DNA from: Hyphochytrium catenoides
Taxonomy: Eukaryota > Protista > Hyphochytriomycota
Direction of reading: 5' to 3'
Length of the DNA stretch: 64,000 nucleotides
Assembly (NCBI GenBank): GCA_900088475.1
Contig: FLMG01001546.1
Span: 62,001-126,000 of the forward strand
Under the pieces are notes generated by a model. The model searched no databases and was not told the origin of the DNA. It saw nothing but the letters and a program-made list of their open reading frames with translations. The first letter of the stretch is position 1; the number at the start of each line of letters is the position of its first letter. A program made the position numbers and the translations under genes. Below are positions 4,602 to 47,064 of this stretch, piece by piece.

Positions 4602-4693
4602 TGTCTATAACACATATAGGGACATATACGCGCTGTCAAGCTTCTGGTGTCTATAACACATATAGGGACATATACGCGCTGTCAAGCTTCTGG
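4602..4693. repeat. Perfect 46-bp tandem duplication immediately upstream of the YeeE/YedE gene
   Basis: tgtctataacacatatagggacatatacgcgctgtcaagcttctgg at 4602-4647 and again at 4648-4693. Confidence 0.95.
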
Positions 4694-4713
4694 CAACAAC
4701 TCTGTTCTGAACC

Positions 4714-15618: not shown

Positions 15619-18600
15619 TTACTCCTCAAAGTGGAGATGATGAGCCACGCCAGAGCCCTAGCAGAGAAGACGGAGTGGCTAAACATTTCCTCGATCACTC
15701 CTATTCTCAGCCCCAAGCAATTTATTGGTGTAAAGAAACCTTATCCAGGCCTTGCAAGAAGCTCTGGATCCTAGTCATTCGTGATGCAACCCTGGAGCGC
15801 GAGGTATTAAGTTTAGAGGCTGCCTCATCATACTGGGAAGTTGATGCCCTTCCAAGCTCCTGTTCGTAATCTTGAAGGGTGGGTTTGGCCTGGCTGACAG
15901 AAAGAGCTCTATCTGTGGGCGCCGCCATCGAAAATTGATCTTGATATGACCTTGCCAGAAGTTTCTGGAAACAGAAGAGATATTTGGCATCAGAGGACCC
16001 ACTGCACAACACTCGGAAGGAAAGGCTTGGGAAAGGAGCTAAAGGCAGAAAATTTATAGGTGAAGCCATGGCAAGCCCCTTGCTAGAAAAATGATCTTCA
16101 GACAGAAAGGTTGCGAGCCAAGCAGCTCTCAGTGTCCTGGATTATAAACGTATCGTACCTGAACTTCTGTAACATAGTCTGGATGCATATCGTCAAACTT
16201 TCCATCTGGGTCCACTTTAGCCCGAGCTGCGGCGTGCACTAGCACGAGCGTGAACTCACCAACATTATCCAGGCGCTCAGGTCGAATGTAGATTGTCTTG
16301 CTTTCTGGGTCAACCCAATATGAATTCTTAAATGCGTCGTAACCCTTAGGACCAGCTGGAAGAGCAGTTGCAGTTTGTAACTGAAAGCCCAGGGCAGAGA
16401 TTCCAAGTTTGTCAATAAGGTCCCGTCCGTATTGGAATCGCAACTTCCTTCGTGGCTCCAGGTTATCTGCAGCAAGGACTTTGAGCTCACCCTCGGGTGG
16501 TCTAGCAGCATCTCTTCCCACACCAGGATGAGCAGCGATAATGGCTCTGGCAACTCTTTCCTTGACTTCTGGTTGGACTTCCGGAGTAACATTGATGGAA
16601 GGCACTGGCGCCGAGACGGACGACAAGGAGCTGGACAAGTGCTTGATGAGGTTTTCCAGGGCTTCAATCCGACTCAGCACAACTTCGTTCCCACCAGGGG
16701 CATCGGCTCCTGCCTTTTTACCAGAACCGCTGCTTTCAGATATGCTCTGTAGCGTGTCCTGTTTCTTGAATCCGCTCTTTGAAAGCACATCTGCCCACTT
16801 CTTTTTGATAGCCACGTCAGTTTGTTTTGCTACCCGAGGCGCGTCAGAGATAGCCTTTTGCATTTGCTGTTCCACTGCACGGATGGATTTCGCCGTCTGT
16901 GCATGATAGCCAAGAAGAGGTCAGCAGAAAGTTACTAATAGGTCTCGAGGAGGCAAAACAGGATACTCAGACAAATGTCTACGAACTATTTTTAAGGGAT
17001 GAGTAAAGGTTCAACAGAGATGATTGTATACCTGCTCTTGCTTCCACGCGAGATCTTTGTCTCGCTTTTCCTGCTGTGAGTTGATTTTAGTTGCTCTCCT
17101 CTTTTCAAGCCGAGCTTTCAATTGACTCTGCTGTCTTTCCCTTTCTTTCTCAAACTCTGTGAGACTTTGCTTGCTGTCGGCCTCAAACTTCTGAAGTAAG
17201 AGCTTCTTTTGGTCTTCACTTATATCGCCCATTGCCGCCAGCTTCAAAGTAAGGTTGAAGTTAGTCCAAGAATGATAGGTTCTTCTCCCTTGATGACATT
17301 CATCTTTATAGAGAAAATAGCTTTTACCTGTTTGTCTGCCTGAAGTTTCTTTTCCAGTATGAGCTTCTCCCTTTGCTCTGCCAGCCTTTGCTCTGCTAGC
17401 CTCTTTTCGTTTTCAAGTTGTGTCACATGCTCCTGCTCGAGTTTGGCGATCTCTTCCTCTGCTTTTTTCTTTACTTCCAGTTCAAAGTCCTCTTTCTGCT
17501 TCTTCAATGCCAGAATGCGCTGCTCTTTTTCTGCGAGAAGATTATCCTATTTGTCCATACGGCAATGTGTGAGCTTTGCGCAGCAAGGGCAGCGAAGCAA
17601 GGAAGGGGCTGTTAACACCCGCAAGAATTAGGTCCAAGGGGCCGTTATGAAGTCTCATAGCGAGTAGTCAGAATCAGAATTGGAAGAATTGCGTCGAGTA
17701 GAGGGGCACAAACCTGAAAAACTCTCAGCTCTTCTTGAGCTTGTTTCGCATTCCGTAGNNNNNNNNNNNNNNNNNNNNNNNNNNNNNNNNNNNNNNNNNN
17801 NNNNNNNNNNNNNNNNNNNNNNNNNNNNNNNNNNATGGACGTTGTCTCCATTTCTAGTGTTAGCTGTCTTTCTTTATACTTGCTCTCCAGCTGGTTTAGA
17901 GCATCCTCTTTATTAGACTCGGAAGCACCCTCTGCTACCAGTCTCGTTAAGAGTTCCGCCCTTTCTTTCCCTTTCTCCTGCAGCAGCCCTCCTAGGGCCT
18001 TTCTCATTGCCGCAGAACGCTCTCCTGCTTGCTTGGCCAACAGCTCCGTTGTCTCTCTTTGGTGTCTCCTTTGCATGACGATTTCAACAGCTTCGTTCAC
18101 CCGATCTCCGTCAATGATGCCACTTTGTATAGTTTCCTGAAATAAGTAACATGAAGTAGGTGGCCATGACCAAGATTAGAAATTAGTGCCAAACGGTGTT
18201 TGCCTCCATCAGTTTTTGAAGATGCGTGCATTCATTATACTAGCGTCAGGAAATAGATAAAATGCACGCATCAAGAGAAGGGAACCCTTCTAAAGCGCGC
18301 ATTTACAGTCCGTGATTGTACGCGGAGAGTATACGATAAGCCGTATTACTCTACTTGATACAGGATCCAAAGATAGAGGATCTAAAGAGAAGAGTGATGA
18401 AAAAAGCGCAAATAGCCAGACACATTAATCACCTGTAGAGCCTTGGCCTCTCTCTCCATATCAATTTGAGTCCTTAGATTTGAGGACTCTATTTGTTGTT
18501 CGGATATCGTCTTGGCTTTCTCCTCCTGTTGTTTCTGTGTGATCTCCTGCTGCTTCATTTTCTTCCGCAATTCGATCCTCTTCCTTAGCTGATCTTGTTT

Positions 18601-21600
18601 CTTATCCTGTGATTCAGTTGCGAGAAGATACAAAATGATCAGGGTCAATGCTCTTGCCCCGAAAGCAACCCATTTCAACGTTGGTTGGCTCTCCTGCTGT
18701 CGCTCGCTCTCTTACTGGACTACTGTCTCCGCCTTGAACGGGAATCACTGACCTTCTCAGCCTCAATGAGCCGTGCATGCTGCGTTAACTGATCGTCGTA
18801 CTGCCGCTTCACGTTCGCTAACTCCTCCGTCGTGGCTGCTTCTTTTAGTAGCTTCTCCTGTAGCTCTTTCTTCTTCTCCTCAATCAGCCGGTTTGCCTCG
18901 TCCTCCTACAGTGCGCACACGCTATGTGAGTGCTGTCTGAGGTGACTTGTCGTCTTTATGCTCTACCTGGCGCTTCAACTCTGCAGCAAGTTCCTGCTGC
19001 AGGGCTGCCATGGCCTCCTTCTCCAGCTTCTCCTTTTCTTCTCGATGCTTCTTTTCGAGATCATCCCGGGCCTGCAGGCATTATCAGAAAAATAAGCAGC
19101 TTCTTCTTCGAAGCACAATCAAGGCTTCAATGTTACCCTTCGTTGCTCGTCTTCCAGGCGGAGTTCCTCATCAGACTTGCCGCTCTCTGCAGCTGTTGAC
19201 TCCACCTTCTCCCGCAAAGCTTTTTCCCAGGTACTTCCTTGGCTTTCCAATTCTTTTGTCTCGTTTTCACTCTTGACGGTAAAGAAGAGGACATTAGCGG
19301 TTAGAGGCCCCTCACCGATCCTGTACTAAAGAGCCTAAACCTACCATCTTCTGCATCATCGCCTTCTTTTTCTCCTCTAGAGCTTTCTTTTTCTGAGCTA
19401 GCCTTTGCTCCAATTTAGAAGACGCCAGTCTTCCAATCGCTTCGCTGTCAGCGTTTCGCTTAGCTTCTTCCTTCTGGTACTCTTGGGCAACCCTCGCGGC
19501 TTCCATTTGTGCTTGATCCGCTTCGGCCTTGGCTAGGGCCTCGGCAGCCGCTTTGGCAGCTGCAGCAGCAATCTTGGCTTTGGAAGCACTCTCAAAAGCG
19601 GCAACCTCCTCCTGGAGTGTCTTCCCCTTTTCAAGCTGCGGCGCAACAAAAGTCAGAGTAATTTTCACGTTCCTGCTTATCTAGCTTTCACTCCTGAGGC
19701 TCGATTATCGAGTTCGATTACTTCGGTACAGATCTATCTCAGCGAACTTTCTAGAGGTCTGTCAAGTGTGTCTGGGTTACAAAAGAGCGTCTTACCTCCA
19801 TCAGTGCGGCCAATTTGCGTTGCTGGTCTTCCAACAGCTTCTTACGCTCCGCTTCCTCCTCGCCTTGAAGTTCCTCTTCAAGCTTCTGCTTTCCGCTTTC
19901 CCCCAAGGCCATGGCCTCCATCTCTTTTTGTCTAAGTGCTCTCCTTTGCCTGTGAGGTTGATGTAAGGGTTCCTGTCGATAGTCTATATTGTGACAAAGG
20001 AGCTACCGCAATCTCTCCTCCAGCTTTTTGCTTTCTCCTTCTTGTTGGGCGGCAAGCTTTGATTCTAAAGTTTCCAGGTGCTGTTGGTGCTCGAGCTTCA
20101 TCCTCTTCAGACTCTGTTCTGCTTTGTCCTTTTCGTTTTCAGCATCCGCTAGATTCTTCTCTGCTCTCTTTTTGGACTCTTCCAGGAGCACTTTGTCCTC
20201 TTCCGCTAACTGTAATGGACAGCCATGTATACAAGTGGAATTTGGACGAACTGGAGCAAAGGACTTACCTGTGATGTTGATTCCTGGTGAGAGCGACTTT
20301 CAGGAAGAGATATGCTGCTAACCTCGTCCTTTCCTTGGTCCCTAGAGCTGAAGATCGACTGCAACGCGTCCAAGTACCGTCCCTTTGTCTTTCCACTTTG
20401 CTCTCTAGCCTCATGTAGTGCTAGCTCCTTCGAGATGGTCCTCAGGGCACTCTGCGCTGCTCCAAGGGCCAGCCGGGCCCGGACGGCTTCTTCGAGGACG
20501 GGCCTCCTTTCTTCGACCAGCTCCTGGCGAAGCTTCTGTATAACATCCCTTCGCTCCTCTGCCATGGTCCTAACCTCTGACGCAATATCAGACTGCCGGT
20601 GCAATGCTTCAGTTAAGCTAAACCCAATAACGATAAGCTCTTGTATTTTCTTACCTCCGTGAAGCCTGGGAGACTGCCTCCTCTTTCAGATGTCCTACCG
20701 TAAGTAGTGAATGGTAAGAAGCCAAGATTGCCCAATTACCCCTGGGCACGACTAGTGGTCACCCCTTACTTCCCATCTGATAAGCTTACTAATCACCCAG
20801 AAAAAGGCGTCTCCTGCTACTTACCCCACTCTAGCCTGCAAATCGCGGAAATGAGCATCTTCTTTTCGCTTCAGCTCGTCTAGCTTGTCCTTGATCTTTC
20901 TTTCTTGGACCTCCCCAAGCAGTACAAGTCTGTCTTCCACATTTTTCCGATGCACTTCGGCATTCACCGCTCTTTCTTGCACATCTTCCTGGAGTCTTGT
21001 TGCGGTCTCTTGCCACTCGCGAGCTACCTTATTCTCCTCCTCCGCTATCATCTCCTGACCTTGGAGCATGATTTGCTGCTGCAGAGCCAGCTCCTGCTTG
21101 GAAACCTCCTCCTCAATCTTCTTTTCTGCCATGGCAATGTCCTCTGCTGACTGATCCTAGTTTAAGAGGCACCACATAGGTGAGTTGGTCAGCTGCAAAG
21201 TCCACCAGTGAAATGGACTTCAGGGAAATCTATCCAGTGGGAATAGTCCAATGCCTCTTCTAACCTTCTTGTCTTTAAGTTTGCCGAGCATCCGCTTTTT
21301 CCTGTTCATCAGCTGCTTCCTCTGCCTTTCAAATTCTTGCTCCAGATTGGCATACAAATCCTTCATATTCTGATCACATTTCTCCTTCATGTTTTGCATG
21401 ACACTTCGCACCTCGAGGGCAGCTTGCCTCTCGGCGGTCTCCTCCACTGCAGTTCTTGCAGCGGTGGCAGCTGTCAAGCCTGCGACCCTTGTCTGGGCCA
21501 GCTTTTCGGTGACAGCAGCCAGTGCAGTCGTCTGGCTATTGTGAAGCTGCTTGAATTCTGTCTCCTTCTGCGCCAAGATAGAGTCTAAAATTTCGTCACG

Positions 21601-24600
21601 AGAAGCCTGCATGAACCACAGCACCTTAGTAATCGTTCTAGTTTCCTATTCGACTCGGATTAGCAGCAAAGGGTTTTGGCACTCTTGTGTTTGGAGTGGA
21701 CTTTCGTCAAATACCTTCAGCTCCTGCTCTACCTCAGCCATTTTATCCGCAATCTCATTTTCGGTTGCTCCAGCTGCCCTTAAGTCCTCTTCAACCTTAT
21801 TTGACAGCTCCCTGAAGATAAAGTTAGCCGTCGCTTGCTACTTAAGGGGCAGCTGGTACCCTGGTACTCACCTTCTAGTGTGTTCAGTGCCTGACAAATG
21901 GATGGTGGCACTTAGTGCCATCTGTTTTTTTAGGAAATCGTACTCCGCAGAAACATCTCCCTGTATAAGGCGGTCTTCTAACTCCACTTCGTAACGAGCA
22001 AGCTCGGCTGAAATGGTTTTTGTCGCTTCTGACTCCTCTAGGCGCCTTTCTTCTTGCTTGCGTGCCTTAAGATGCAGAGCCTAGTTCATCGGACCGATTG
22101 GCCGAAGCGAGGGGTTGCAGTTTAGTGTTGTCTTTTAGACAAACTTAGTACAGCAATACCTTCTTCCTCTGCACTTCTTCGTCTGCCGCCCGGGCTAGAC
22201 GTTCGCTTAATCTCTTGCCCTCCTCTTGATGCTTCTCTGCCAGCTCTCTTTCTACTTGTTCTTTCTCCTCTGAAGTGGCATCCGCATGGGTCAACTCTGC
22301 CAGACGACGATCTTTCTCCTCTTGCTGGGCCTTCCGGAGATTCTGTGTAGCAACTGCTTTGTCCTGCTCCAGCTTCGCTCTAAGTGTGGCCAGCTCGGAT
22401 GCATCCGAGCTTTCTTGGTCCTGCTCCGCAGAAATAGGCCCATTAGAGTAAAATGGTCAGTAACTCGACAGCGAGGATTGTTCAGACAAGGTTTAAAAAG
22501 CCACAATGCATCCATCAGAGAATAAGTAGCCCTCCCGAACTTCATAGCCAGTTTAACACTCTGCGAAAACCCTTGAGGACACATTTGACAATACTTTACC
22601 TTAAATTTGTGATCTACCCTCAGTTTGGCCTCCGCCATGGCTATCTCAACAGCCATAGAACTGGCAAGGCTCGATGCCGCAGCGGCCTTTATTCTTGCCT
22701 CCGCAAGCCTTTCAGTAGACTCCTTTTGCAACTGAGCCCACTGTTCCCTCTCCTTATCTGTGGCATCGCTCCATTCCTTAGCTAGCTTCAGATCAAGGAG
22801 TTCTCGCTCAACCTGTGGAGAGAGATTTGTCAGACCAACGAGTTGAGTCAAGGGTTGGATCAAATGTCGCATATATATCTGAGCACTAGGGCAATAAGGA
22901 AGGTAAGAAGTTGGAAGTCCGGTCCAGAGCCGCCGAAAGGGTTTGTGAGATACCGCTTCCTCCTGTTTTAAGCCGTCGTTTAGCATGATCTTCTCGTCTT
23001 CTGCTTTTGCAGCGGCTAATTGTCCTAGCCTGACATTGCGCTTTTGCCTAATCATGAGAGTCTTAGATATCTCCTAGAATGGCTAACGGAAGCGTTTAGT
23101 TGACCTCAATCGGTCCTCAAGTTTGCCCTTTTCCAGCTCTTTTTGAGCCACAAATGCCTGCTCCCGAAGCTTCAAACTGGCCTCGAGAGTCTCTTGAAGG
23201 AGTCTGAGCTCTTCCGCTGTCCTCAACTTGCTCACCTGTGCCAACAGAAGTCAGCATATAAAATATGAAGCGGTCATCTCGATCCGATCATTCAAGCACT
23301 TACCTCTGCAGCTGCTGCATTGTCCATTGCTGTCTTCTCTGCTTGCTCTGCAAGGACAGTTCTCTCGTCCTGAAGGCGTTGAGCATGTTCATTTAGTGTG
23401 GCTTCTTCATGCTCCTTAAGTTGGTCCTCCAGGTCCTTGCTTTCCTTTAGTTCCTGGTCCAAAAGATCCTGACCTACTGTGTTGTGGGGGACCGAAACCG
23501 AGAATATGGCGTAAATCTAAACGCGACGGCAGAAGGTCAACACATGCTCAACCTACCTCTTGGGAGCTGACCACTTGAGTGCTCCTTAACTCTCCTCTCC
23601 TCAATCCTCTGTCTCAGCTTTATGTGCTGGAGCTCCCGCTCATTGGCAAGTGTAGATTGCAGCTGGAGAAGATCTTCGGCATGCACCTTTGTTCACCGAA
23701 AAGGTCGCAGCAACTACCATTATCTCCAAAGCCCATTTTCACTGCCAAATGCGTTATACATACTTTTTCGACCTGCGCGGTGAGGGCTAGTGCTCTCTCC
23801 CTTCCTTCCTCACCGGCTGCAGCGGTTGACAGTGCAGCTGCCAGGGCTGTAGAGAAGGAGGCCGCTGCCTGTCCTACCGCTAATTGTTCATCATACTCTT
23901 GTCGAACGTCGACGAGCTTCCTTGCGTAGTCTTTTCTAATAGAAGCTTCGACACCCATGAGCTCTAGTTCCATTGACTCCTAAACATCGACAAAGGTAGA
24001 GGTTGGACTCTTGATGATAACACAGATCTAGCTGGTGTGTACTTGTTCAAGGCATGCCTTACCTGCATATTCGTAGATGACGCAGCCCCATCTCTATCAA
24101 TAAGTGTAGGTCAGTGTTAGAGGTGGATTTGTTAACAAGCAATAACAGATGAAGAGGGTACCCCATGCTCAGATCCTTCAGTCGGCTCATCTTAGTTTTC
24201 TCGAAGGTTTCCAGCTGACCTAAGAAGAAGTCTTTGATGGACTTCTCCTTGTTCTGATAAGCTAGCTTGAGCTCCTCGAAATCCGACGACTTGCGCATGG
24301 CCTCCTGGCTGAGGCCCTTGGCAACTCCTTCTACCATTATTTTACTCTCTTGCTTCATCGAAGACTTAAGGGCTGCTTCCTTGTCTTTGAATGTCTTATT
24401 CAGGGACTCCAATTCCCCGAGCCTATCCTTCTTTAGCGTTAACGAAGCTGGCTGCTCCTTGAGTCGTGCTTCCTGCAATCGCTCTGCCCACTTCCTCTCA
24501 ACTGCTATCTCTGAACCTATCCAAGTCTTGGTAAGCTCAATTTCCGCCCTCACTAGGTTGAGGGAGGCTTCAGTTTGGAGGCCTAAAAGTGTGACCGGGG

Positions 24601-33600: not shown

Positions 33601-36600
33601 GAGCAGAGTGAGCAGGTAGTTACCGAGGTAGCTGCAGTCGCGAGCGAAAATGTTCCAGGTCGACAAGGCTCCGGTGTCAAACTCCCAGCAGGGCAGAAAA
33701 AACCCTGAGGGCAGGCATAACCTGTAACGCCGTCGTTAGGATTCGGAATGCTGCTACCGCCTTTACATATAAAACCAGCGCTGCAGTTCCCCGTTGGGGC
33801 CATAAGACCAAGCGAGCCGCAATATTGACTGGGCGGGCAAGAAATGCAGTCTGTGGCGGCGGTGCTATAAGAATTAGGGTTGTAGGTTCCCAGGGGACAC
33901 TTCAGAGCTAGCGGTGTGCCGAGGGGACAGTACGTTCCAGGAACACAGGCCTCTCCAAAAGTCATGTTAGCAGAAGGGCATTGATACCCTATCGGACATG
34001 GAGTGCAAGTTGCAGCGCCAGGAGACATAGAATAAGTGCCTGGAGGGCAGGGCAAGGGGCTTGATGAACCCTCCAGAGTGTAAAATCCCGGAGGAGTGAT
34101 GTATTGGGTGGCATTCTCGCTCCCTCCATGACAATAATAGCCCGGCGCACATTTACCCGTAGGTGCTGGTTGTGAGCTCCCGCTACAATAATACCCTGGA
34201 GGGCATGGCTGACAGTCTAGCGCCGAGGTTGAGCCCGTATTATTATTAAAAGTACCAGGAGGACAAGGACTTGCTTGATATGAGCCACGCGGACAGAAAC
34301 CACCTGGAGGGCAAGGTCCTCCCGTACCCGGCACCGCTACAGATCCGGGGGACCCAGGAACAGACGACACGGACCCTGAAATGCAGTAGTAACCAGCATC
34401 ACAGAGGTTTGTTGGCGCGGGTAAACCCGCCCCATTGCAGAAATAGCCAGGACTGCACGGGAGACATTCCTCTACTGCTTTCAGACCAGTGTAATTGCCA
34501 AACGTCCCAATAGGACAAGGCTCCGGTTCTACACTCCCAGAGGCACAATAGTGCCCACGAGGGCATGTAATAGGGGACTGAGAAGCTCCAGGACAGAACC
34601 CTCCAGCAAGACAGGTTAGACATTCCGCTAACGACCCCAATCCAGCGTTGGGGCCGTATCGGCCCGGAGGACAACTCTTCTCCTCGGGTCCTGTAGACGA
34701 CCCTGGACAGTAAAAGCCGGGCGAGCAGCGTCCACGAGGGAAAGTTGAATTTGCACTACACCACCATCCCTTTGGGCATTCCAAGCAGTCCAGGGCTGAC
34801 ATGGCATTGGTGAGATTGTTGTAGGTTCCTGGCGGGCATGGTGTAGGCCTTGAAGTTCCTGCAGTGCAAAAGGAGCCTGATGGGCAAGGAGTCAGGGTGG
34901 AGGTGGGAACTACAGCCGTTCCTTGTGCACAGTACATTCCAGGGAAGCACACCCCAGCAAGAGCCGCCGTACTGTTTGAGTAAGCGCCACCTATCAGCAT
35001 TGCAGTTTGTGACGTCCCTTCAGCGGCACAGAAGTACCCAGCAGGACATCTTGAACATTCTGCTAATCCTGCTTGCGAGAAGTAGCCTGCTGGGCAAGGA
35101 ATCGGTTCACTCGCACCTTCCGGGCAAGCGTAACCTTCTGGACAGCGGTTACAGGCTGGCCAATCGCCAGGCCCCGCATCGGTAGATCCCAACCTCGAGG
35201 AATATGTGCCCCCAGGGCATGCAGCAGGAGAAATGGAGGCTGCAACGCAATAGGATCCCTTGGGACAAGCCATGCATTCTCGCTCATCGATGCGTCCAGT
35301 GTTGTTAGAGTATGTTCCTGCAGGACAAGGGTAGTCTGTTGGGGACCCTGTACCCTTAGGACAGTAGTGACCCGTTGGACAGATCCCTGTGATCTCGCTG
35401 GAAGCTCTTGCACAAAAGTGACCTTCTGGACAAATAGTGCACTCTTCTGCAACTCTCAGATCCCTTCGGGCACTATAGGTCCCAGGAGGACAGGGAAACT
35501 GGGTGGCGTAAGAGGTACCTCCGGATCCGCTACTTGGGCAGTAGTATCCTGGAGCACAAGGAAGGGGAGGATTACTGTTACCTCCGGTCCCCTGTTGACA
35601 ATACTGGCCGGCAGGGCAAGGTAAGCAATCGGTCAGGCTAGCGGCAAAAGTTAGATTGTTGATTGTGCCTGCAGGACAAGGGAACTGCGTAGCGGAAGCT
35701 GTGCCTGAAGGGCAATAGTATCCTGGACTGCATGGAAGCGACGCCACCGAGGCTCCAGTTGAGGGACACGCAAAACCCGGAGGACAAGGGAAGCAAGGAC
35801 CCGTCAGGTTCACTGTTGGGTTATATGTACCAATCGGGCAAGGGAGGGGAGATATGCTGCCCCCCGGGCAGTAGCTACCAGAGCTACAACCGTGGCAGTC
35901 GGAAACAGACGTTGCAAGTGTCGCATTGTTATAGGTTCCTGCAGGACAAGGATTGCCTGTGTAAGTGTCGGTACCCGCAGGACAATAGTACCCCGATGGG
36001 CAGGCAATGCCCCCAGAGGAGCCAGAGGGGCAGTAGTAACCTGGAGGGCAAGGAAGGCAGCCAGAGATGGAAGATTTTCCTAATTGTAGATTAAAGGTCC
36101 CTGCTGGACATGACGGTGGGGAAGATCCAGTGCCCAGCGGGCAATAAGATCCACTGGGACATAGGTTAGAGAGCATCGAGATGTAAGTCGACCCCGTAGG
36201 ACAGAAGTAACCCGCTTGGCACGTTTGGCAAGCATGCGAGACGCTTCTCCCTGCCGTTATATTACCAAAAGTGCCTGCAGGGCAGCGGGTAACTGTGCTG
36301 GCGGGAGAACAATAGGAACCTAATGGACAGGCACTGCCCTCTGGGGTGGGGGATACCGAGCCTGCCGGACAGTGATAGCCGTCCTCGCAAGCAGTGCAAG
36401 TTGCTGCGTTACCGCTGGAATAGGTACCAACCGAGCACTGCACTGGAGGCAATTCGGGATCACTGCAAGAAGAGCCCGCAGGGCAATCGGTGCAGGTGAC
36501 AGATCCCCCCAAGGAATACTTGCCTGTGGGACATCGGACAGGGGCAACATCCGTTCTGGCACAGGAATGTCCTGGGCACGTATCTTGGTCAAATTGCCCA

Positions 36601-39600
36601 TATCGAGGGAAAGACAAACATAGCGTTCTTACCTGCTGGACAGGAGGTGCATTTGTTGGCTCCTGCTAGAGAGTACTCCCCTACTGAACAAGGGACTGCT
36701 ACGGCGGAATTGGTGACAGCACAGGCATAACCAGCAGGACACAGAGTACAGGATGACTGGTTACCCATTGAGAACGAACCCACTGGACAGAGTGTTCGGG
36801 AATCACTGTCCGTCAATGGGCAGTAATAACCGGGCGGACAAGGATTGCATTGCTGTTGCCCACCAACACTGTATGTCCCCGGTGCACAAGCTAATTCAAC
36901 GCTCTCATGTGTAAATGGGCAAGCATAACCAGGCGGACAAGATGTGCAACCTGCTGAGCCCACGATAGAATAACTTCCCGGGGAGCAGTTGATGATGCCC
37001 GTCCCGTCTGCATTGGGGCAGGCCTGGCCCGGTGCACAAGGCGTACATGCTGCCTGACGACCAAGAGAGAATGTCCCTTTCGGACAGCTTTGCGATGTGC
37101 TTTGTTCCTTAGACGGACATTGCTTGCCAGCCGGACAAGCCGTGCAAGAGGCTGCACCCCCTGTGGAATATGTCCCATTCTCGCATGCTACCATAATGCT
37201 TGCTGTTGTGGTCGGACACGCAAATCCAGCAGGGCAGCTTGTGCAGCTCGTCTGATTACCGATACTAAAAGTGCCGAGTAGACAGAGTTGGGGAGTCCCA
37301 TTCAGTGTTGGACAGGCAAAGCCCGCCGGGCAATCTTGGCACCTAACTGCTCCCGTTGCGCTATAACTTCCAGAAGGACATACTATAGGAGGCTGAGAAG
37401 TTAACGGACAGTAGGACCCTGCGGGACAGGTTGTGCAGGAAGTGGAGCCTGGGTTAGAGTATGTGCCTGAGCTACAGGTAACTGGTTCCTGGTCCGTCCT
37501 GGAACAAGAGAATCCAGCGGGGCAAGTTGCGCAAGAACCACTGCCGAGTAAAGAGTAGGTTCCAGTAGGACAATTCGTCGGACTTACGCCAGGATTAGTG
37601 CATCCCTTCCCTGCCGGGCACTTTTGGCAGGTGCTGCTGCCTGCGGTGCTGTAGAAGCCAGGTGAGCAGCCTACTGGGTTCTGAGAAGATGACGGACACT
37701 CACTCCCAGCTGGACACTGCGTGCAGGAGACCGAGGCAGCCGTGCTGAATGTCCCAGACGGGCAAGGGGAGCAGGTAGAAGCTCCCAAAGCGCTAATAGT
37801 ACCAGCGGGACAAGGGGTACATGCCCTAGCTCCTCCCCAGCTGAAGGTCCCTGCGGGGCACTGTTGGGGTGAGATTGCGGGATCAGCACAGCTTTGGCCA
37901 GCGGGACAAGAGGTACACGAGGTGGACCCGTTGTTTACGTTGTATGTTCCCTCAATACAGGGTGCGCATCGGGATGACCCACCTAAGGAGAAAGTACCTG
38001 GAGGGCACGGCAGCGGGTGCAGTGCGGGATCTGAACAGGAAGCTCCAGGAGGGCAAGACACGCAGTACGCAGAGTTTAGAAGAGAGTAAGTCCCTGTCGG
38101 ACAAGCAGCAGGAGCCACTTGATTTGGGCCGCAAGAAAAGCCAGCTGGGCAAGGGATACAAGCACTGGCATTGGGCGCTGAAAACGAGCCTTGGCTGCAC
38201 TCCACTGGCGCCAAGTGGGGCTGAGAACAGGAGTACCCAGCAGGACACGGTAAGCATGACGTTTGATTAGACAGTGTATTGTAGGTTCCCGTTTGGCAAG
38301 TGGAGCACACAATGCTTCCTCCTGATGAAAAAGTTCCTGGCGGACAGGAATTTGGCAGAACCGAAGCACTAGGGCATGCATATCCAGGTGGACAAGCAAG
38401 ACAAGAGGTTGATCCCAGCCCTGGGGCGTAGGTGCCCCCTGCGCATGGGACGCAGCTGGCTGAAGATATTCCCCCAGAAGAAGATGAACTTCCGGAGGGA
38501 CAAGGAATGGGCATCGTGCAGTTGCCGTGACAGTAATGACCAGGGGGGCATGTCAGACAGAAGTCTGAGCCATTCACTACGACATTGTACCGTCCTGCTC
38601 CGCAAAATTGAGGGCAGGTGGAAACGACAGGTGCAATCATAAATTTGACTTTGGCACTCTGCGGAACGAAAGATGCGTTGCTACCGTTGTATGCCAGATC
38701 TAAGCTTGCAGCTTGATGCAGCAGGCTCGAGCCGTATGCTGTTGAGTGCGATCCATTACTACCTGATGCTCGGACCGTTACAATGACGGGAACATTCCAA
38801 TTCGCGGGCTCGATCTGCAGGGGCAGGTCAGTTTCTATCTCTAAGTAGTTCATTTCATGGCCGCCCACTCCTTGTTCGATCACATCGATCGTCACTGGTG
38901 CTTTTGGTCTGGAAAGGAGTGACACTGCATACGTCGTAGTCTCACCCTCCACTAAGAAAGTATCCGCTTTCAATAGGCTGATTCCGGTCACATCATTCTC
39001 ATAGATGAGTACAGGCAATGTGAAGTTGCTCATTGCCTCTGTGGAGCCATCTTCCCTTTTGACCGTTACCATGTGAACAATGGACTCCAGACGAACTGGG
39101 TTAAGCAGAGCATCGTCATCGTCGATAACTCTGACCACAATATTTTGAGGGATGGAGTAGTTCGAGGTACTGAAACTTAGTGAAGGAGGGGAGATAGTGA
39201 TCGATCCAGACGCAGGGACCATTGTAACGACCACGGGATCGGTCGGTACCTCAAAAAAGGCAATTGAGTAGCCAGCACTTTCTCCCTCATAAACCTTGAC
39301 TCGACTGACATTAGAAAGAATTTGCGAAGGGCGGGTATCGTCAGCGATTGTCAAACCAGGTATGCTTTCACTCTCATCGATCACGGTAGACACATTCTTG
39401 GTCCTCGCGCGAATTGGTCCTGTTATGCCGGCACGGGGCGGATTCATGACCCCCTCAACTTTTAGGGTCAAGCTTGTCTGAGCTGAGAGTGCCTGGTCGA
39501 TCTGGATTACAAGCTTCATAAAGTTTGCTTGCCTTTCGATCATAATGGATGAGACAGATATGGTGTCAGGACTGACCATTATCAAAGGGTACTTTACTAT

Positions 39601-42358
39601 GGCGAAGCCAGGGGGCATTTCCACCTCCAAATAGGCACCGCTTGGAATAGGGTTTCCAAGAGTAAGGTTCAGAATAAGCCTAGGTAAGCCGTTGGTTGTT
39701 GCATCACCCTCAAGTTCCACTGTAACAGGTGCAAGACGCCCAGGAGTGGTGGTCAATCCGTATCTGGAAAGGCCGGAGTCAATAAGCCTTCTTTGGCTGT
39801 CTCGAGTTTGAACATTTATCGTCATTGGGCCTGTCACGTAAGCAGGATTCCTGATACCAGTGACAGACATGGCCACCCTGGAGCCCGATGGTATGGGCAT
39901 TGCTTCTATCTCGGTCAGTAGCAGCACCCGGTTTGTGTCACTCGTTTCGAGGGAGACATTGTAATGGCGTATCTCAGAGAAGATATCCACGATAATCTCT
40001 TCCGGGGGGGTTGAGAGAGTGAGAGCAGGAGGAAGTTCGATTGTGATGACGCCATTGGACGGGATGGAATTGACGGTTGTGAAAGAGACATTTAGAGCCG
40101 TGTGCGCTCCAGCCGCAGACCCTCCCCCAATGTATGCTACTTCAAGCTCCGTTAGCTCGCCAGGAAGTACGTCAATTACCGTCAAACCATCCGCAGCATC
40201 CACCGAGAAGGGCTGGTCTGCTACGTAGAAGCCCGTTGTAACGCGAAAAGTTCCTAAGGGACCGGCCACTGGAGGGAGCCTCGTCGCGCTAATATTCAGC
40301 TGGAGGAATGTGCCGCTTGGAATATTCGAAAAGTAACGACAATGAATAATGTTGTCCATCTTGCTGCACTGGGACGGTATGATGTCTGGCTCCTCCCCGC
40401 TGATCACTTGTGCACTTGTAAGGTTAATAGAAGGTGGGAAATTGACAGTTAAGCTTCCCTCTGACCGCAGAGTGTTAGTAGTCGTTACAGCTATTGTAAA
40501 CCCGGAAGGTAAGCCCGCCCTTACGAATCCATAGTGCTGAACTCTTGCGAAAGCTAGGTTTCCGGGCAGAATATGGACATTAGGAGAGACTGCGCTGAAC
40601 TGGATTACCTTCCCGTTTCCCTCATACTGGGTACTAACAGCCAGAGCACTCAATGCAGTGCTATAACCTGGAAGCTGGATGCCTAAGAGGAGAAGGCTAA
40701 TTTTGGTGCTAGGAGGCAATGGTGCCAGCAGTGAAATCTTCAATTTCCGACCATCAAGGCTGGAGTAGTGGTCGTGCAGAAGTCCTTCAGGTATCGAAGT
40801 TAGAGTGGTTTCCCGTGAAAAGGATAGGTCGCCCGGTGCCTCTATCTGGATAATGCCTTCCATTGGAACTGGGATGGATGTCGTCAAGGTAATGTTAAGA
40901 CTTCCTAGCGACCCTGCACGCAAGGTGCCTAGCGGTCGCACGGTTATCTCAGAGAAAGGTTGGGGGAGTACTGCGGCGGTGTGAACTTCACCGCCATCGA
41001 TGTGTAACAAATCCTCTGTCATTGTGTGAAGACGGAGAGAAAAGTTGCCTGCGTAACCGGGATTTCTGAGGCCCACAATTCTGAGTGACAGTGTGGAATT
41101 AGCTGCTATTGTTCCGGAAGTTGTATAATCAATCAGTATCAACTTGTTTGCAGCATTGTCACTAAGGCTGCGAATATGAAGACTTCCGAGACCTGAGCTC
41201 TGGTCCACGGCTGCACTATCCGCCTCATAAGCAGAAGGAACTATTAACTCCAGAACACCTGTTGCAGGTAGAGCATTGAAACTTTTGAAGGTTACTGAAA
41301 GAGCACTACCACTTGACGGCTCTGTAGATGAGGTAGTGACCTCCAAAAGGCTGAGGTTTCGTGGGATAAACATGGGGTAGTCAGCCTGGAAAAAGGAATC
41401 GAGAGCCGCACCAAGGGCCGTACTGGTGACCAGACCGACATAGCTTAAATTGCCAGACGTTGGAGGATTCCTGACCCCAATTATGCTTAAGACAATAGCT
41501 GTTCCTTTCGACACAGGAGCCATGCAGCGGAACAATATAGCACCATTTGTGATAGCAGGGGGTGATGGGATCACAGCATTTGGGGTGGAGTAGACAGCAG
41601 CATCCGAGAAATTCATACCAGGGAGAAACACCCGAATTTGGCCATTGACAGGAATGGCAGTCTGAGGGGCAAAGGAGACATTAACCGTGCTCATCGCCCC
41701 GGCTTCTATCGATGAGAACGTGAAGAGTGTCTCTTTCAATGCCGGTGGATACAAAACGTACCCCTGCACGGCGGAAGGTCCAGCTAAGGTGATGCCATCA
41801 GCCGACAGAAGTGTCAGGCCAAACCCTCCCGTAGAACCGGCGAAAGATGGGTTCAAGACATCGCGAAATACAATCTCCAGTTCCGAACTTTTCAACAAAC
41901 TTGACCCTGAATGAGAGAGTGCGATAGAAAAGGTATTTGAGCTAGCCTCAGAGGTAAGCGACGCCAATATATTCTTATTGGCATCGGTAACTGTGACTAC
42001 TGTCGCGCTCAAAGCTGTAAACGAGGAGGGGAAGGTGACGTTAATAAGGCCGTTCACCGGCAGATCTGCCTCCAATGTAATCACAGCCACGATGTTAGCA
42101 ATGCTTCCCGTTATCTGGGAGGTTGGAAGCACAAACCCAACATCGTCCGAAGCTGCCATGTCAGTGTGAGCGCTCATAAGTAACGATACGGGAGCAATCA
42201 CACATCCTAAACTTACCCAGCTTTCTGTGAGTACTTCTAAAGTCGTCTTCGAACTGTTGTGCAATAGATAGAGACTGCAGCACCAGGAGAGTGCAAAATG
42301 CTGCAAGGAGCTGATGCCATCGGAACCCCCTCCACAGTAGGGACTTTGGGGCCATCAT
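15619..42358 (-). CDS. Giant single-pass membrane protein: signal peptide, Ig-like and Calx-beta-like repeats, long GCC2_GCC3/ephrin-receptor-like Cys-rich array, TM helix, very long coiled-coil tail
   Basis: Exon 1 (ATG 42358) encodes a signal peptide and splices in frame through intron 42153-42216 to the 1905-aa ORF. Intron 36572-36632 joins the 1630-aa ORF. Cys-repeat exons continue to ~29400, the TM segment GLLSGLFGVIFLVILSLYYIRR lies at ~28470-28545, and E/K/Q-rich exons run to a probable stop at 15619. Not every junction in the tail was verified. Confidence 0.8.
17759..17834. other. Assembly gap (76 N) inside a coding exon
   Basis: Run of n characters. Confidence 0.99.
29400..38630 (-). 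repeat. Coding tandem array of Cys-rich CPxG[Y/T/F]xC units
   Basis: Continuous CPAGxYCPxGS / CPxGTYS / C..C units through both long ORFs and the following exons. Units are diverged at DNA level. Confidence 0.95.
30854..30909. other. Assembly gap (56 N) within the Cys-rich region
   Basis: Run of n characters. Confidence 0.99.
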
Positions 42359-45516: not shown

Positions 45517-47064
45517 CTAGGTAAAGAATACAGCCCATTTCAGGGCGGTTGGAGCAGAGGTCGAGGCACAGAGTCTGAGCACATGGTCGCCACCTTTCTT
45601 CGTGCCGTCAGACACCGTATACCATTCCTTCCAGTTCTGCCAGTACCTAGCGCCAGGATGCTTTGCATCCAAGGTCCAGGAGGCCTTGACAGGCATTGCA
45701 TTGAGTGAGACATCAATTTCTGCTGTTGCTGTCAAGACGTAGACCCGGAGGTCAAAGTCAAGCTCAAAGACCAGAGAGTTGTTCAAAGAGCATGAAGGAA
45801 GCGCAAGTGAAAGTTGTCGGTCATTCCGGAGTGGACTCGCCTTGCCCTGCTGCACTATCAGTGCGTCGTCGAAAGAAGCCTTTTGTTGCCTGGGACAGGA
45901 CTGCCCCATGGGTTGAATGCATACCTTTGTTTTCAGCCGTGGCTCTCCGTGGAGGGGAGGCGCTACAAGGAAGGATGCCGCTGTTAGGGTGTTTGCATCC
46001 AGCAAAGGTTGCTGCTGGTTCCAAGGAAAGATGATCGAGGATGGAGATGCCCAGTCAAAGGAATAAATGTTAGACTCTGCCGCCTCAGAGCCCGTTAGCG
46101 CTTTTGCCATCAGTTTCAGGAGTTTGTAACAAATGAGATCAGCAATGATAAGATGGCTCTGCTCATTGGGGTGATGCATATCAGCAAGTACCATATTCTT
46201 GTCGGCCGCCAAAGTTTCGTTCGCAGCGATGTATTGTCCAAGTGAAACCGAGACATATGAGATGTGCTCACGGTATACCAGATTTGCTTTTTCTTGTATT
46301 ACTTCCACTGAACTTGGTGTTGGCCAGCGGTCATAGTATGGAGGATAATCGTAGAGGTTTACGAAGAGTAGGGCTGGTTGACTGGGTAGCTGCTGGGTCT
46401 TCCGGATCCACAGTTCACGGTTGGCCATTAGTTCGGATGCCCGGTCGACCTCAATGCTTCCAAGTGCATCTGGCGCCCGCTCCATATCGTCGTTGAGAGT
46501 GAACTCAGAGGCGAGGATGTCGGGGTCAATCCCAACGAGGGAGTCCAATAGGAGAGCCGACCACAAGGTGTTGGTAGTGCCGTGAGCGCTGTTCTTCAAG
46601 ATGACCCTTGAGTGCACATGGTTTTCGAGAATTGAATTAAGGAAGTGCACAACGCGGTGTGGGTAGGCAGCTATAACACCCCTCTTGAGTCCTCCGCCAG
46701 CAGTCGAGGAGCCACCGGTGACAGCAAATGTGATATTTTCTTGACGCAGAAGCAGCTTCCTGAAGGCTGCTGTAAACCTTCTATGGTCAGGGCTTGTGCC
46801 ACCCATCTCAAGCAACTCCAACCCATGATGATGGCGCAATGTCTGTAGTGCACCTTCAATATCCAACAGGAGCTTACGATTAAGAGACGCAAGGCTTGAG
46901 CTCTGCAGTTGTGGGGTATCTTTAACTCCATCCGCTGCCCTTAAGAGGCCATTAGGAACCAACCGGAATGTCTGTCCTTGCTGATAGGTGACAAAGAGAA
47001 CACACACCAGCAACCCTGCCAAGGCAAGGGCTATTCGAAAGTGATCAGGTGTACATCGAGCCAT
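45517..47064 (-). CDS. SGNH/GDSL-family esterase or acyl-modifying enzyme with N-terminal membrane anchor (type II)
   Basis: 515-aa intronless ORF with hydrophobic anchor IALALAGLLVCVLFV. SGNH blocks: VTGGSSTAG (Ser), NSAHG (Gly), EFTLND (Asn), DMHHPNEQSH (DxxH). Confidence 0.85.
   Translation of the reverse strand: MARCTPDHFRIALALAGLLVCVLFVTYQQGQTFRLVPNGLLRAADGVKDTPQLQSSSLASLNRKLLLDIEGALQTLRHHHGLELLEMGGTSPDHRRFTAAFRKLLLRQENITFAVTGGSSTAGGGLKRGVIAAYPHRVVHFLNSILENHVHSRVILKNSAHGTTNTLWSALLLDSLVGIDPDILASEFTLNDDMERAPDALGSIEVDRASELMANRELWIRKTQQLPSQPALLFVNLYDYPPYYDRWPTPSSVEVIQEKANLVYREHISYVSVSLGQYIAANETLAADKNMVLADMHHPNEQSHLIIADLICYKLLKLMAKALTGSEAAESNIYSFDWASPSSIIFPWNQQQPLLDANTLTAASFLVAPPLHGEPRLKTKVCIQPMGQSCPRQQKASFDDALIVQQGKASPLRNDRQLSLALPSCSLNNSLVFELDFDLRVYVLTATAEIDVSLNAMPVKASWTLDAKHPGARYWQNWKEWYTVSDGTKKGGDHVLRLCASTSAPTALKWAVFFT

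What the first reader, a model, noticed from the sequence alone, without database searches (positions are those of the whole stretch)
15619..42358. Giant (~7,000 aa) single-pass receptor/tether with a rod-like ectodomain and an equally long cytoplasmic coiled coil
Seen: the scattered minus-strand ORFs over 26.7 kb splice into what appears to be one gene. It encodes signal peptide, ~1,170 aa of beta-sandwich repeats, ~3,000 aa of Cys-rich repeats, a compact non-repetitive module, one TM helix, ~3,000 aa of E/K/Q/R heptad-rich sequence and a globular C-terminal domain. Known: GCC2_GCC3-type Cys arrays occur in protist surface proteins, including apicomplexan and ciliate CRMPs needed for triggered secretion, but CRMPs are multi-pass. 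Inference: a long extracellular filament coupled to a long intracellular rod, with no kinase or channel, suggests a mechanical tether or sensor (flagellar surface, extrusome docking, adhesion). I recall similar unannotated architectures in oomycetes, ciliates and aquatic animals, so it may be an ancient uncharacterised family.
Basis: partly seen in the sequence, partly recalled or inferred. Interest (0 to 1): 0.75.

Follow-up and report, generated by a model that had tools for sequence, protein, structure and literature searches.

The report
Giant ancient membrane-spanning tether protein
This protist gene really does encode one protein of about 7,200 residues, with a long cysteine-rich stalk outside the cell and a long helical rod inside. 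It belongs to an unnamed family found in many distant groups of single-celled eukaryotes, and its function is unknown.

Summary
The minus-strand ORFs from 42358 to 15722 join into one gene. My best model has 54 exons and about 7,183 aa.

- **Layout:** signal peptide; seven ~130-aa repeats; about 2,770 aa of Ephrin_rec_like (GCC2_GCC3) cysteine repeats; a membrane-proximal module; one TM helix; about 2,845 aa of proline-poor, E/K/Q/R-rich helix; a C-terminal domain.
- **One gene:** a profile built from 31 relatives maps colinearly from the outer module to the C-terminus. A Fabomonas transcript carries every block in one ORF. In Aphanomyces, the TM helix and the segment that forms the window's next exon lie in one open frame.
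- **Assembly gaps:** both lie inside coding exons. Both keep the reading frame at their nominal length.
- **New details:** the membrane-proximal module is a copper-less cupredoxin-like sandwich, preceded by a conserved RRRL loop that may be a cleavage site. There is a conserved mid-cytoplasmic domain. The C-terminal domain has a zincin-like fold, and the catalytic Glu is absent in all 128 motif instances.
- **Family:** none of these three domains has a Pfam model, and every named relative is called "hypothetical". Relatives occur in stramenopiles, dinoflagellates, euglenozoans, Diphylleia and Fabomonas.
- **Function:** the tether or sensor idea is inference only.

The scan has already noted this same stretch once (s1-345912).

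The parts
42217..42358 (-). Exon 1: start codon and signal peptide (MMAPKSLLWRGFRWHQLLAAFCTLLVLQSLSIAQQ)
   Evidence: First ATG after an in-frame stop. Donor GTAAGT, 64-nt intron with a CTGAC branch-point-like site, acceptor CAG.
39346..42152 (-). First part of exon 2: seven tandem repeats of about 130 aa (aa 49-983). This is a lineage-specific head, with shared motif P..L...V...G...T...P..G.h.h.hP ... L.h.G(V/I)(R)NP...G
   Evidence: Alignment of the seven units. In a leave-one-out test, each unit is found by the HMM of the other six at E 2e-10 to 8e-24. No Pfam family; DUF2808 only at its threshold. Not found in the relatives held.
38617..39345 (-). Exon 2, about 240 aa of non-Cys modules between the repeats and the Cys array
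   Evidence: Read from the translation. No Pfam match. The fold was not tested.
36633..38616 (-). Exon 2, start of the Ephrin_rec_like (GCC2_GCC3) cysteine-repeat array
   Evidence: PF07699 at E 1.4e-27. Same ORF as the repeats above.
31806..36571 (-). Exon 3: about 1,590 aa of cysteine repeats in one open frame
   Evidence: ORF of 1,646 codons. PF07699. 61-nt GTAAG...CAG intron before it.
29604..31741 (-). Seven small exons that finish the cysteine array (31741-31534, 31471-31385, 31326-31074, 30928-30831, 30766-30500, 30447-30254, 30201-29604). Assembly gap 30854-30909 lies inside the fourth.
   Evidence: Splicing restores the C..CP.G periodicity. Exon 30201-29604 aligns without a break to relatives at 38-45% identity over about 200 aa. 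Gap flanks GGPCPA / LGQDCPAG are in one frame at the nominal length. The donor at 31074 is weak; a stronger GTAATG donor lies at 30986.
28775..29541 (-). Three exons of the membrane-proximal outer module (29541-29287, 29222-29142, 29077-28775): small Cys knots, a conserved ARRRL loop (RRRL at 29027-29016), then most of a cupredoxin-like beta-sandwich (YPIYVKDSMLNTNQNFDFGLFR at 28907-28842)
   Evidence: Colinear tblastn and profile matches. Consensus and invariant residues. AF2 model of relative P0157, with Foldseek matches to plastocyanin (prob 1.0, TM 0.59) and laccases. RR.?L present in 34 of 46 relatives against 3.8% background.
28435..28719 (-). Exon with the last strands of the sandwich, a CP...PDW linker, the single TM helix (28546-28478) and the stop-transfer YYIRRSNW
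   Evidence: The only strong hydropathy window. Matches 69 relatives. Profile match at iE 1.4e-29.
17032..28371 (-). About 38 exons of the cytoplasmic helical rod (aa ~4354-6850). The first exon begins YKEKAKKKDFSQLHQKGAMV. Exon borders in this part are approximate.
   Evidence: Composition. No Pfam family. Weak but colinear profile matches. The junction with the TM exon is backed by an Aphanomyces ORF holding the TM helix plus YKNKARGFNLTNLTSKGSVV in one frame. AF2 of the relative shows helices 50-87 residues long.
17714..18136 (-). Exon with the conserved mid-cytoplasmic domain (ETIQSGIIDGDRVNEAVEIVMQRRHQRETTELL...), interrupted by assembly gap 17759-17834
   Evidence: Matches in 155 of 167 proteins held at that point. 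Profile match at iE 4.3e-26. Both gap flanks align to the same domain. Its spacing to the C-terminal domain is conserved, median about 460 aa.
16159..16896 (-). Exon with the C-terminal domain. The zincin-like core is about 16479-16159. The motif LVLVHAAARAKV lies at 16248-16213.
   Evidence: 186 library proteins at E<=1e-3. AF2 model with pLDDT 83 overall and 89-98 in the core. Zincin-fold matches by Foldseek and VIA. Motif statistics.
15722..15964 (-). Last exon (KLLARSYQDQF...RIQSFLQGLDKVSLHQ) and stop codon
   Evidence: The splice 16159>15964 reproduces the relatives' spacing exactly: TEFYRLLGRCYQ against TEVQ|KLLARSYQ. The tail motif aligns to relatives. No further coding found downstream.

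Best explanation
SHOWN. One gene encodes a type I membrane protein of about 7,200 aa. It belongs to an unnamed family spread across distant eukaryotic groups.
- Outside the cell: a lineage-specific head of seven ~130-aa repeats, then about 2,770 aa of disulfide-rich Ephrin_rec_like repeats, which probably form a stiff stalk.
- Next to the membrane: a conserved module that ends in a copper-less cupredoxin-like sandwich. Just before it lies a disordered loop with a conserved RRRL motif.
- Inside the cell: about 2,200 aa of variable helical rod, then a conserved C-terminal cassette of about 650 aa. The cassette holds a mid-domain, a helical spacer of conserved overall spacing, a zincin-like domain without the catalytic Glu, and a short tail.

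INFERRED. The protein is a transmembrane tether or force-bearing link. The variable head and stalk would bind or project into the surroundings. The RRRL loop would be cut by a convertase-type protease in the secretory pathway, giving a two-chain receptor held together at the cupredoxin-like stub. The rod, probably dimeric, would span hundreds of nanometres. Its dead-protease end domain would dock onto a conserved internal partner, most likely cytoskeletal. Only the outer parts vary between lineages, so the conserved job lies in the membrane-proximal and cytoplasmic parts.
For: One gene:
- Long ORFs and canonical short introns.
- Colinear mapping of the 31-relative profile from 29841 to 16165, and of single relatives.
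- The Fabomonas Trinity ORF P0036 (7,499 aa, marked complete) carries Cys repeats at 57-4433, the outer module at 4576-4663, the TM region at 4663-4754, the mid-domain at 6661-6726 and the C-terminal domain at 7145-7261.
- Aphanomyces ORF L002:3941-4297 holds the TM helix and the next cytoplasmic segment in one frame.

Family and breadth: 186 library hits with the same architecture. Sources include Fabomonas, Diphylleia, Diplonema, Rhabdomonas, Hondaea, Achlya, Saprolegnia, Aphanomyces, Ochromonas, Triparma, Discosporangium, Durusdinium and Symbiodinium.

Folds:
- Cupredoxin-like.
- Zincin-like: jannalysin Z 7.6, abylysin 7.1, Wss1 6.8, selecase 6.8, Spartan 6.4.

Dead active site: among 128 motif instances the residue after the first His is never Glu (105 Ala), while the second His is kept in 125.

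RRRL: present in 34 of 46 relatives against 3.8% background, and it falls within the model's low-confidence stretch 142-155.

Conserved cassette: mid-domain to C-terminal-domain spacing has an IQR of 439-492 aa, whereas TM to mid-domain ranges from 416 to 3,139 aa.

Rod: helices of 50-87 residues in the model of the relative; the window's cytoplasmic part is 1.3% Pro and 39% EKQR.
Against: - There is no transcript evidence from this organism.
- Most relatives are computed gene models, which could share the same fusion error. The Trinity ORFs and the Aphanomyces open frame speak against that.
- Many exon borders in the rod are uncertain. Two automatic introns had to be removed after comparison with relatives.
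- Two assembly gaps fall in coding sequence.
- There are no data on localisation, partner or cleavage. RRRL could be a conserved structural or sorting motif.
- The fold matches are moderate (Z below 8, Foldseek E about 0.01-0.04).
- The window's own copy reads HAAAR and so lacks the second His.
- Coiled-coil pairing was not predicted with a dedicated tool. My crude heptad score marks only about 27% of the cytoplasmic residues.
- The ectodomain could face the lumen of an organelle rather than the outside.
Confidence: 0.45

Rival explanations
1. Precursor of a secreted filament. Cleavage at RRRL releases the giant Cys-rich chain as a coat, hair, cyst-wall or adhesive component. The stub and the cytoplasmic rod serve only to sort, position or dock the secretory vesicle that carries it.
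For: A conserved dibasic-type motif sits in a low-confidence loop just outside the last folded outer domain. The head and stalk length vary between lineages, while the stub and cytoplasmic parts are conserved. The model has 61 N-glycosylation sequons in the ectodomain.
Against: Cleavage is not shown. A rod of about 2,800 aa with a conserved end cassette seems excessive for sorting alone. 12 of 46 relatives lack RR.?L in the scanned stretch.
Confidence: 0.2
2. Internal membrane spacer or membrane skeleton element. The Cys-rich part faces the lumen of an organelle (ER, vacuole, secretory vesicle), and the rod organises that organelle or lies beneath the membrane as a skeleton.
For: The topology (signal peptide plus one TM helix) does not distinguish the cell surface from a lumen. 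Long-helix membrane proteins on internal membranes are well known, such as kinectin and golgins (from general knowledge). The family occurs in walled osmotrophs as well as naked flagellates.
Against: Disulfide-rich Ephrin_rec_like arrays with many sequons are typical of surface proteins (general knowledge). A lineage-specific outer head suggests contact with a changing environment.
Confidence: 0.15
3. Two neighbouring genes wrongly joined: a surface protein that ends about 25 residues after the TM helix (the open frame stops at 28402-28400 if the intron is retained), and a separate coiled-coil protein that starts at an internal Met.
For: Without splicing, the TM exon's frame ends 33 nt after the proposed donor. 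The next exon contains a Met (GAMVQPK). The 2014 paper raised the same doubt for giant animal proteins.
Against: In Aphanomyces the TM helix and the homologous cytoplasmic segment lie in one open frame. In the Fabomonas transcript they lie in one ORF. At least 39 relatives carry the TM region, the mid-domain and the C-terminal domain together. The 63-nt interval has a good donor (GTATGT) and acceptor.
Confidence: 0.04
4. Assembly chimera or decaying pseudogene: the two N-gaps join unrelated pieces, or the gene is no longer intact.
For: Two scaffold gaps fall within the gene. The window's C-terminal motif has lost the second His.
Against: The flanks of both gaps are coding, in frame, and of the same kind of sequence. 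The flanks of the second gap align to one domain of the relatives in the correct order. Open frames of 1,921 and 1,646 codons and intact conserved domains argue against decay. The gene is single-copy in the 61-Mb assembly.
Confidence: 0.02

Closest known systems
Cysteine-repeat modular proteins (CRMPs) of apicomplexans and ciliates
   Same: Large secretory-pathway proteins of protists with GCC2_GCC3 / Ephrin_rec_like arrays (PF07699).
   Different: This protein has one TM helix and a cytoplasmic rod of about 2,800 aa with its own conserved domains. No sequence link beyond the Cys repeats was seen.
Minigluzincins (selecase, abylysin, jannalysin) and Wss1/SprT-type zincin metalloproteases
   Same: The C-terminal domain has the same small sheet-plus-active-site-helix fold: VIA Z 7.6-6.4 with rmsd 2.2-3.4 A over 79-89 residues, and Foldseek probability up to 1.0. 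It has two His four residues apart on the helix after the sheet. In 77 of 128 instances a Glu follows about 20 residues later.
   Different: The catalytic Glu of HExxH is absent in all 128 instances and is mostly Ala. There is no sequence-level match to any solved structure. The domain sits at the end of a giant membrane protein. The window's copy has also lost the second His.
Cupredoxins (plastocyanin, laccase domains) and other copper-less cupredoxin-like binding domains such as the ephrin ectodomain
   Same: Greek-key sandwich of about 100 residues (plastocyanin TM 0.51-0.59, probability 0.99-1.0).
   Different: By inspection of the aligned motif (YVFSMSS in place of a Cys/His/Met site), no copper ligands are present. 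The comparison was made on a relative (P0157), not on the window's own spliced sequence. The E-values are weak (0.02-0.04).
Long coiled-coil membrane tethers (kinectin, giantin and other golgins, nesprins/KASH proteins)
   Same: A membrane anchor joined to a helical rod hundreds of nanometres long, ending in a docking domain. This is a functional analogy from general knowledge.
   Different: Those proteins are tail-anchored or type II and have small luminal parts. This one is type I with a 4,300-aa outer part. No homology was detected.
Two-chain surface receptors cut near the membrane (Notch S1 site, adhesion GPCR GAIN domain, SEA-domain mucins)
   Same: A conserved basic motif lies in a flexible loop just outside the last folded domain before the membrane. 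This is an analogy only.
   Different: Cleavage was not shown. No GAIN, SEA or LNR domain was found by Pfam.
Giant animal "exclusive proteins" with GCC2_GCC3 repeats and a helical C-terminal part (Grishaeva & Bogdanov 2014, PMC4132317)
   Same: 3,906-7,710 aa, with GCC2_GCC3 repeats and a helical C-terminal region, in Placozoa, Mollusca, Hemichordata and Tunicata.
   Different: Those authors met them as spurious look-alikes of synaptonemal-complex proteins and suspected fused gene models. Whether they carry this family's outer module, mid-domain or C-terminal domain was not tested here.

Membership tests
Ephrin_rec_like / GCC2_GCC3 repeat proteins (PF07699) | Pfam PF07699 above its gathering score | tested here: met
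   95.6 bits in exon 2, 31.3 in exon 3 and 41.6 in exon 30201-29604, against a cut-off of 23.1. The array has 130 CP.G motifs and 303 Cys in 2,767 aa.
CRMP (cysteine-repeat modular proteins) | Several transmembrane helices after the Cys-rich ectodomain | tested here: not met
   Only one hydrophobic window passes threshold in the whole model, at aa 4316-4334. Relatives likewise show one TM helix.
The unnamed family defined here (relatives P0036, P0021, P0065, P0152, P0128 and others) | Membrane-proximal outer module with the YP.Y.KDS..NTNP.FD.G.FR core, directly before the TM helix | tested here: met
   Window 29084-28773 matches 65 relatives. Profile match at iE 1.1e-33.
The unnamed family defined here | Mid-cytoplasmic domain (RH..E...LL...Y.ER...L) about 460 aa before the C-terminal domain | tested here: met
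   Window 18148-17837, profile iE 4.3e-26. Alignment with relatives. Spacing statistics. The distal third is hidden by the assembly gap.
The unnamed family defined here | C-terminal domain (SLP...NAF.NS..YD....L.(I/V)(R/H)..RL...G(D/E)F.LV..HA..H(I/V)K) followed by EF(Y/H)..L | tested here: met
   186 library hits. Alignment with relatives. The splice-spanning TEVQ|KLLARSYQ matches TEFYRLLGRCYQ. The window reads HAAAR instead of HA..H.
Active zincin metalloproteases (minigluzincin / Wss1 / SprT) | Zincin fold | tested here: met
   All of the top 21 VIA rows are zincin-type folds, with best Z 7.6. Foldseek finds selecase at probability 1.0. The scores are moderate.
Active zincin metalloproteases (minigluzincin / Wss1 / SprT) | HExxH with the catalytic Glu | tested here: not met
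   No Glu in 128 instances: Ala 105, Cys 11, Ser 4, Thr 4. The window reads H-A-A-A-R.
Blue-copper cupredoxins | Cupredoxin fold with His/Cys/His/Met copper ligands | tested here: inconclusive
   The fold was matched on relative P0157. The ligands appear absent from the family consensus by inspection. No residue-by-residue structural superposition was available.
Coiled-coil proteins | Heptad periodicity over long stretches; paired helices | tested here: inconclusive
   The relative's model shows helices of 50-87 residues. Proline content is low and charge is high. My crude heptad score marks 27% of cytoplasmic residues against 0% of the ectodomain. No dedicated predictor or multimer model was available.

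The most novel reading that the evidence does not exclude
The family is a very old eukaryotic transmembrane linkage, possibly present in the last common ancestor. A convertase-cut extracellular filament would be held by a cupredoxin-like stub and coupled, through a rod hundreds of nanometres long, to a dead-protease docking domain that grips a conserved cytoskeletal structure. That would make it a new class of force-bearing surface-to-cytoskeleton connector, comparable in role to integrin or LINC-type links, that has escaped notice because animal, fungal and plant model organisms lack it or annotate it badly.
Probability: 0.2. Interest if true: 0.85.

Novelty: new variant of a known kind. Interest (0 to 1): 0.66.

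Why it matters
- A protein this large is costly to make. It is kept with the same domain order in stramenopiles, dinoflagellates, euglenozoans, CRuMs and ancyromonads, so it must do something important. Yet none of its three conserved non-repeat domains has a Pfam model, and no relative whose source gave a name (about 20 were read) has an informative one.
- This report defines the family by testable signatures, which makes it searchable and allows phylogenetic profiling. The signatures are a copper-less cupredoxin-like stub with an RRRL loop, a mid-cytoplasmic domain, and a zincin-like end domain that never has the catalytic Glu.
- The report also gives concrete experiments in tractable relatives (Diplonema, thraustochytrids).
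- It answers a doubt raised in 2014, that giant proteins combining GCC2_GCC3 repeats with a helical tail might be fused gene models. At least in protists, the fusion is real.

Tried and rejected
- **Self-training exon finder.** It drifted into dozens of tiny false exons. Codon bias is too weak (GC3 about 0.5), so I used fixed splice matrices, zone-specific composition and relative-supported exons instead. I then removed three false in-frame introns after comparison with relatives.
- **Word-indexed protein search with the Fabomonas protein.** Restricting it to the C-terminal region and to the membrane-proximal region found only the query itself and one further protein. These blanks say nothing about giant relatives or animals.
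- **ESM Atlas with the C-terminal exon.** No usable lead; best score 0.79.
- **Profile search of PDB sequences with the C-terminal alignment.** Only low-complexity noise, such as the HSP90 charged linker.
- **Pfam.** No family on any cytoplasmic exon or on three relatives. Nothing on the N-terminal repeats beyond a borderline DUF2808.
- **BLASTP of the N-terminal 1,250 aa against itself.** No repeats found. They appeared only with an HMM.
- **Extra coding downstream of 15722.** The ~130-aa coiled-coil tail seen in some relatives was not found there.
- **Literature searches for the architecture.** No paper describes the family.
- **Joined model.** No search or fold was run on the joined (spliced) protein. 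Every database search and fold used a single exon by reference or a relative's protein id. The joined model existed only inside local scripts, for length, hydropathy, composition and coordinate mapping.

Full report
**Observation**

The window is eukaryotic, with short GT...AG introns and about 50% GC.

- On the minus strand, two open frames of 1,921 and 1,646 codons (42354-36592 and 36665-31728) are far beyond chance. They are joined by a 61-nt GTAAG...CAG intron.
- A 142-nt first exon starts at the first ATG after a stop. It encodes a typical signal peptide and is joined by a 64-nt GTAAGT...CAG intron.
- Pfam finds Ephrin_rec_like (PF07699, formerly GCC2_GCC3) in both large exons and in the small exons down to 29604.
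- Confident introns share GTAAGT-like donors, a CTRAY branch-point-like site and YAG acceptors, and most are 40-100 nt.

**Gene model**

Codon bias is too weak for a composition-only gene finder, and a self-training finder failed. I therefore combined open-frame constraints, fixed splice matrices and relative-supported exons. I then corrected three false in-frame introns by comparison with relatives.

The result has 54 exons and 7,183 aa, 45 of them X at the gaps:

| Part | Position (aa) |
|---|---|
| Signal peptide | 1 to about 35 |
| Seven ~130-aa repeats | 49-983 |
| Two further non-Cys modules | about 984-1226 |
| Cysteine array | 1227 to about 3993 |
| Membrane-proximal module | about 3993-4315 |
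| TM helix | 4316-4338 |
| Cytoplasmic part (2,845 aa) | 4339-7183 |

The stop codon is at 15724-15722. Borders of many rod exons remain approximate, so the length is about 7,100-7,200 aa plus whatever the gaps hide.

No search or fold was run on the joined protein. All searches used single exons by reference or relatives' protein ids. The joined model was used only in local scripts for length, hydropathy and composition.

**Assembly gaps**

- Gap 30854-30909 lies inside a Cys-repeat exon (…GGPCPA[gap]LGQDCPAG, then donor GTCATG). Both flanks share a frame at the nominal 56 N.
- Gap 17759-17834 lies inside the conserved mid-cytoplasmic domain. The flanks LEMETTS and QAQEELRVFQ share a frame at the nominal length.
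- The flanks of the second gap align to consecutive parts of the same domain in the relatives. About 56 profile positions lie between the flanking matches, so roughly 40 residues are probably missing, against the nominal 26.
- Continuity across both gaps is therefore supported, but the true lengths are unknown.

**One gene or two**

The critical point is the TM exon. If its intron were retained, the frame would stop 33 nt later, giving a short tail. Four results speak for one gene.

1. An exhaustive HMMER search with the C-terminal exon found 186 proteins. Many are giant and have the same layout: Cys-rich part, one TM helix, charged helical part, and the domain near the C-terminus.
2. Single relatives, and a profile of 31 relatives, map colinearly on the window from 29841 to 16165.
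3. A Trinity transcript ORF from Fabomonas tropica (7,499 aa, marked complete) carries every block in the same order.
4. In an Aphanomyces euteiches genomic locus, one open frame holds the TM helix followed by YKNKARGFNLTNLTSKGSVV. That segment is the counterpart of the window's next exon, YKEKAKKKDFSQLHQKGAMV. The spacing between the conserved Trp and this motif also matches Achlya.

The splice 16159>15964 reproduces the relatives' spacing exactly. The gene is single-copy in its 61-Mb assembly.

**What the parts are**

- **Head repeats.** The seven units recognise each other in a leave-one-out HMM test at E 2e-10 to 8e-24. They have no Pfam family and were not found in the relatives held. The head is therefore lineage-specific.
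- **Membrane-proximal module.** It is conserved across supergroups, with invariant Pro, Tyr, Asp, Asn, Asp, Phe and Gly.
  - An AlphaFold model of a close relative (P0157, aligned with 30 others) gives small Cys knots, a confident sandwich (pLDDT 80-90), the TM helix, and then helices 50-87 residues long.
  - Foldseek matches the sandwich to plastocyanin and laccase domains, that is, a cupredoxin-like fold. The family consensus lacks copper ligands by inspection.
  - Roughly 20-30 residues before the sandwich's conserved YP.Y.KDS core lies RR.?L, mostly RRRL. It is present in 34 of 46 distinct relatives, against 3.8% of random upstream windows.
  - The motif falls within a low-confidence stretch of the model, residues 142-155. 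It is a candidate convertase or S1P-type cleavage site.
- **Cytoplasmic part.** No Pfam family was found. A mid-domain of about 190 aa is present in 155 of 167 proteins held at that point. It sits a conserved distance of about 460 aa (IQR 439-492) before the C-terminal domain. The TM-to-mid-domain distance varies from 416 to 3,139 aa.
- **C-terminal domain.**
  - The model has pLDDT 83 overall and 89-98 in its core. It matches minigluzincins, Wss1, Spartan, YbeY and aminopeptidase catalytic domains.
  - All of the top 21 VIA rows are zincin-type folds, with best Z 7.6. Foldseek finds selecase at probability 1.0.
  - The helix after the sheet carries H-x-x-x-H. In 128 distinct instances the residue after the first His is never Glu (Ala in 105), and the second His is kept in 125.
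  - The domain is therefore a catalytically dead zincin, probably still metal-binding in most species. The window's copy reads HAAAR and has lost the second His.

**Distribution and prior knowledge**

- Named sources are Fabomonas (ancyromonad), Diphylleia (CRuMs), Diplonema and Rhabdomonas (Euglenozoa), Durusdinium and Symbiodinium (dinoflagellates), and among stramenopiles Hondaea, Achlya, Saprolegnia, Aphanomyces, Ochromonas, Triparma and Discosporangium.
- All carry "hypothetical" or misleading automatic names.
- No peronosporalean, ciliate, apicomplexan or animal member appeared among the names I could read. That is a lead, not a result.
- Literature searches found no description of the family.
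- A 2014 survey met giant animal proteins with GCC2_GCC3 repeats and a helical C-terminal part. It suspected they were fused gene models (PMC4132317). Their membership in this family is untested.
- The genome is probably Hyphochytrium catenoides: 4,759 records here against the published 4,758 scaffolds plus the mitochondrion. RNA-seq exists for that species.

**Mechanism**

Shown: the architecture, the family, the folds, the dead active site and the conserved cassette.

Inferred: a transmembrane tether or force-bearing link.
- A variable head and stiff stalk sit outside the cell.
- A possible cut at RRRL makes a two-chain receptor.
- A long, probably dimeric rod runs inside the cell.
- A dead-protease domain docks the rod on a conserved internal partner.

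Rivals are a secreted-filament precursor, an internal organelle spacer, two genes, and an assembly artefact. The last two are largely excluded.

**Surroundings**

The neighbouring genes are ordinary: a family B DNA polymerase, Bles03 and a sulphur-transport protein.

Noticed in passing
window 16213-16248 (-): The window's own C-terminal domain reads LVLVHAAARAKV. The second His of the family's H-A-x-x-H pair is Arg here, which was seen in only 1 of 128 instances among the relatives held. The putative metal site may be lost in this organism, or this may be a sequencing error.
   Followed up: partly
L002:1-3038 (+), Aphanomyces euteiches CAVMIN010001380.1: The deposited gene model P0192 (3,927 aa) starts just before the membrane-proximal module. 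Open frames full of Cys repeats continue upstream on the same strand, so the public model is cut short at its N-terminus.
   Followed up: partly
protein P0062 (4,087 aa, JGI metagenome): This relative has two copies of the membrane-proximal sandwich motif, at 361-428 and 2360-2442. It may be a tandem pair of genes fused in the model, or a true internal duplication.
   Followed up: no
window 48429-50441 (+) and ORFs to about 55700: A family B DNA polymerase gene (exonuclease domain PF03104, E 3e-55) lies upstream of the giant gene on the other strand.
   Followed up: no
window 2051-3073 (-) and 4714-5823 (+): A Bles03-family gene (PF08939) and a sulphur-transport-type membrane protein (PF04143 plus DUF6691). 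These are ordinary neighbours.
   Followed up: no
window 15722-42358, introns: The introns of this gene are short (median about 68 nt, many 52-65). They have GTAAGT-like donors and a visible CTRAY (often CTGAC or CTAAC) site within about 35 nt of the YAG acceptor. This is useful for modelling genes in this genome.
   Followed up: partly
whole assembly G000: 61.0 Mb in 4,759 records matches the published Hyphochytrium catenoides assembly (4,758 scaffolds plus the mitochondrial genome; PMC5795050). Its Platanus scaffolding would also explain the N-gaps of estimated length.
   Followed up: partly
window 45517-47064 (-): An ORF of 515 aa with no Pfam family at E<=0.001. Not examined further.
   Followed up: no
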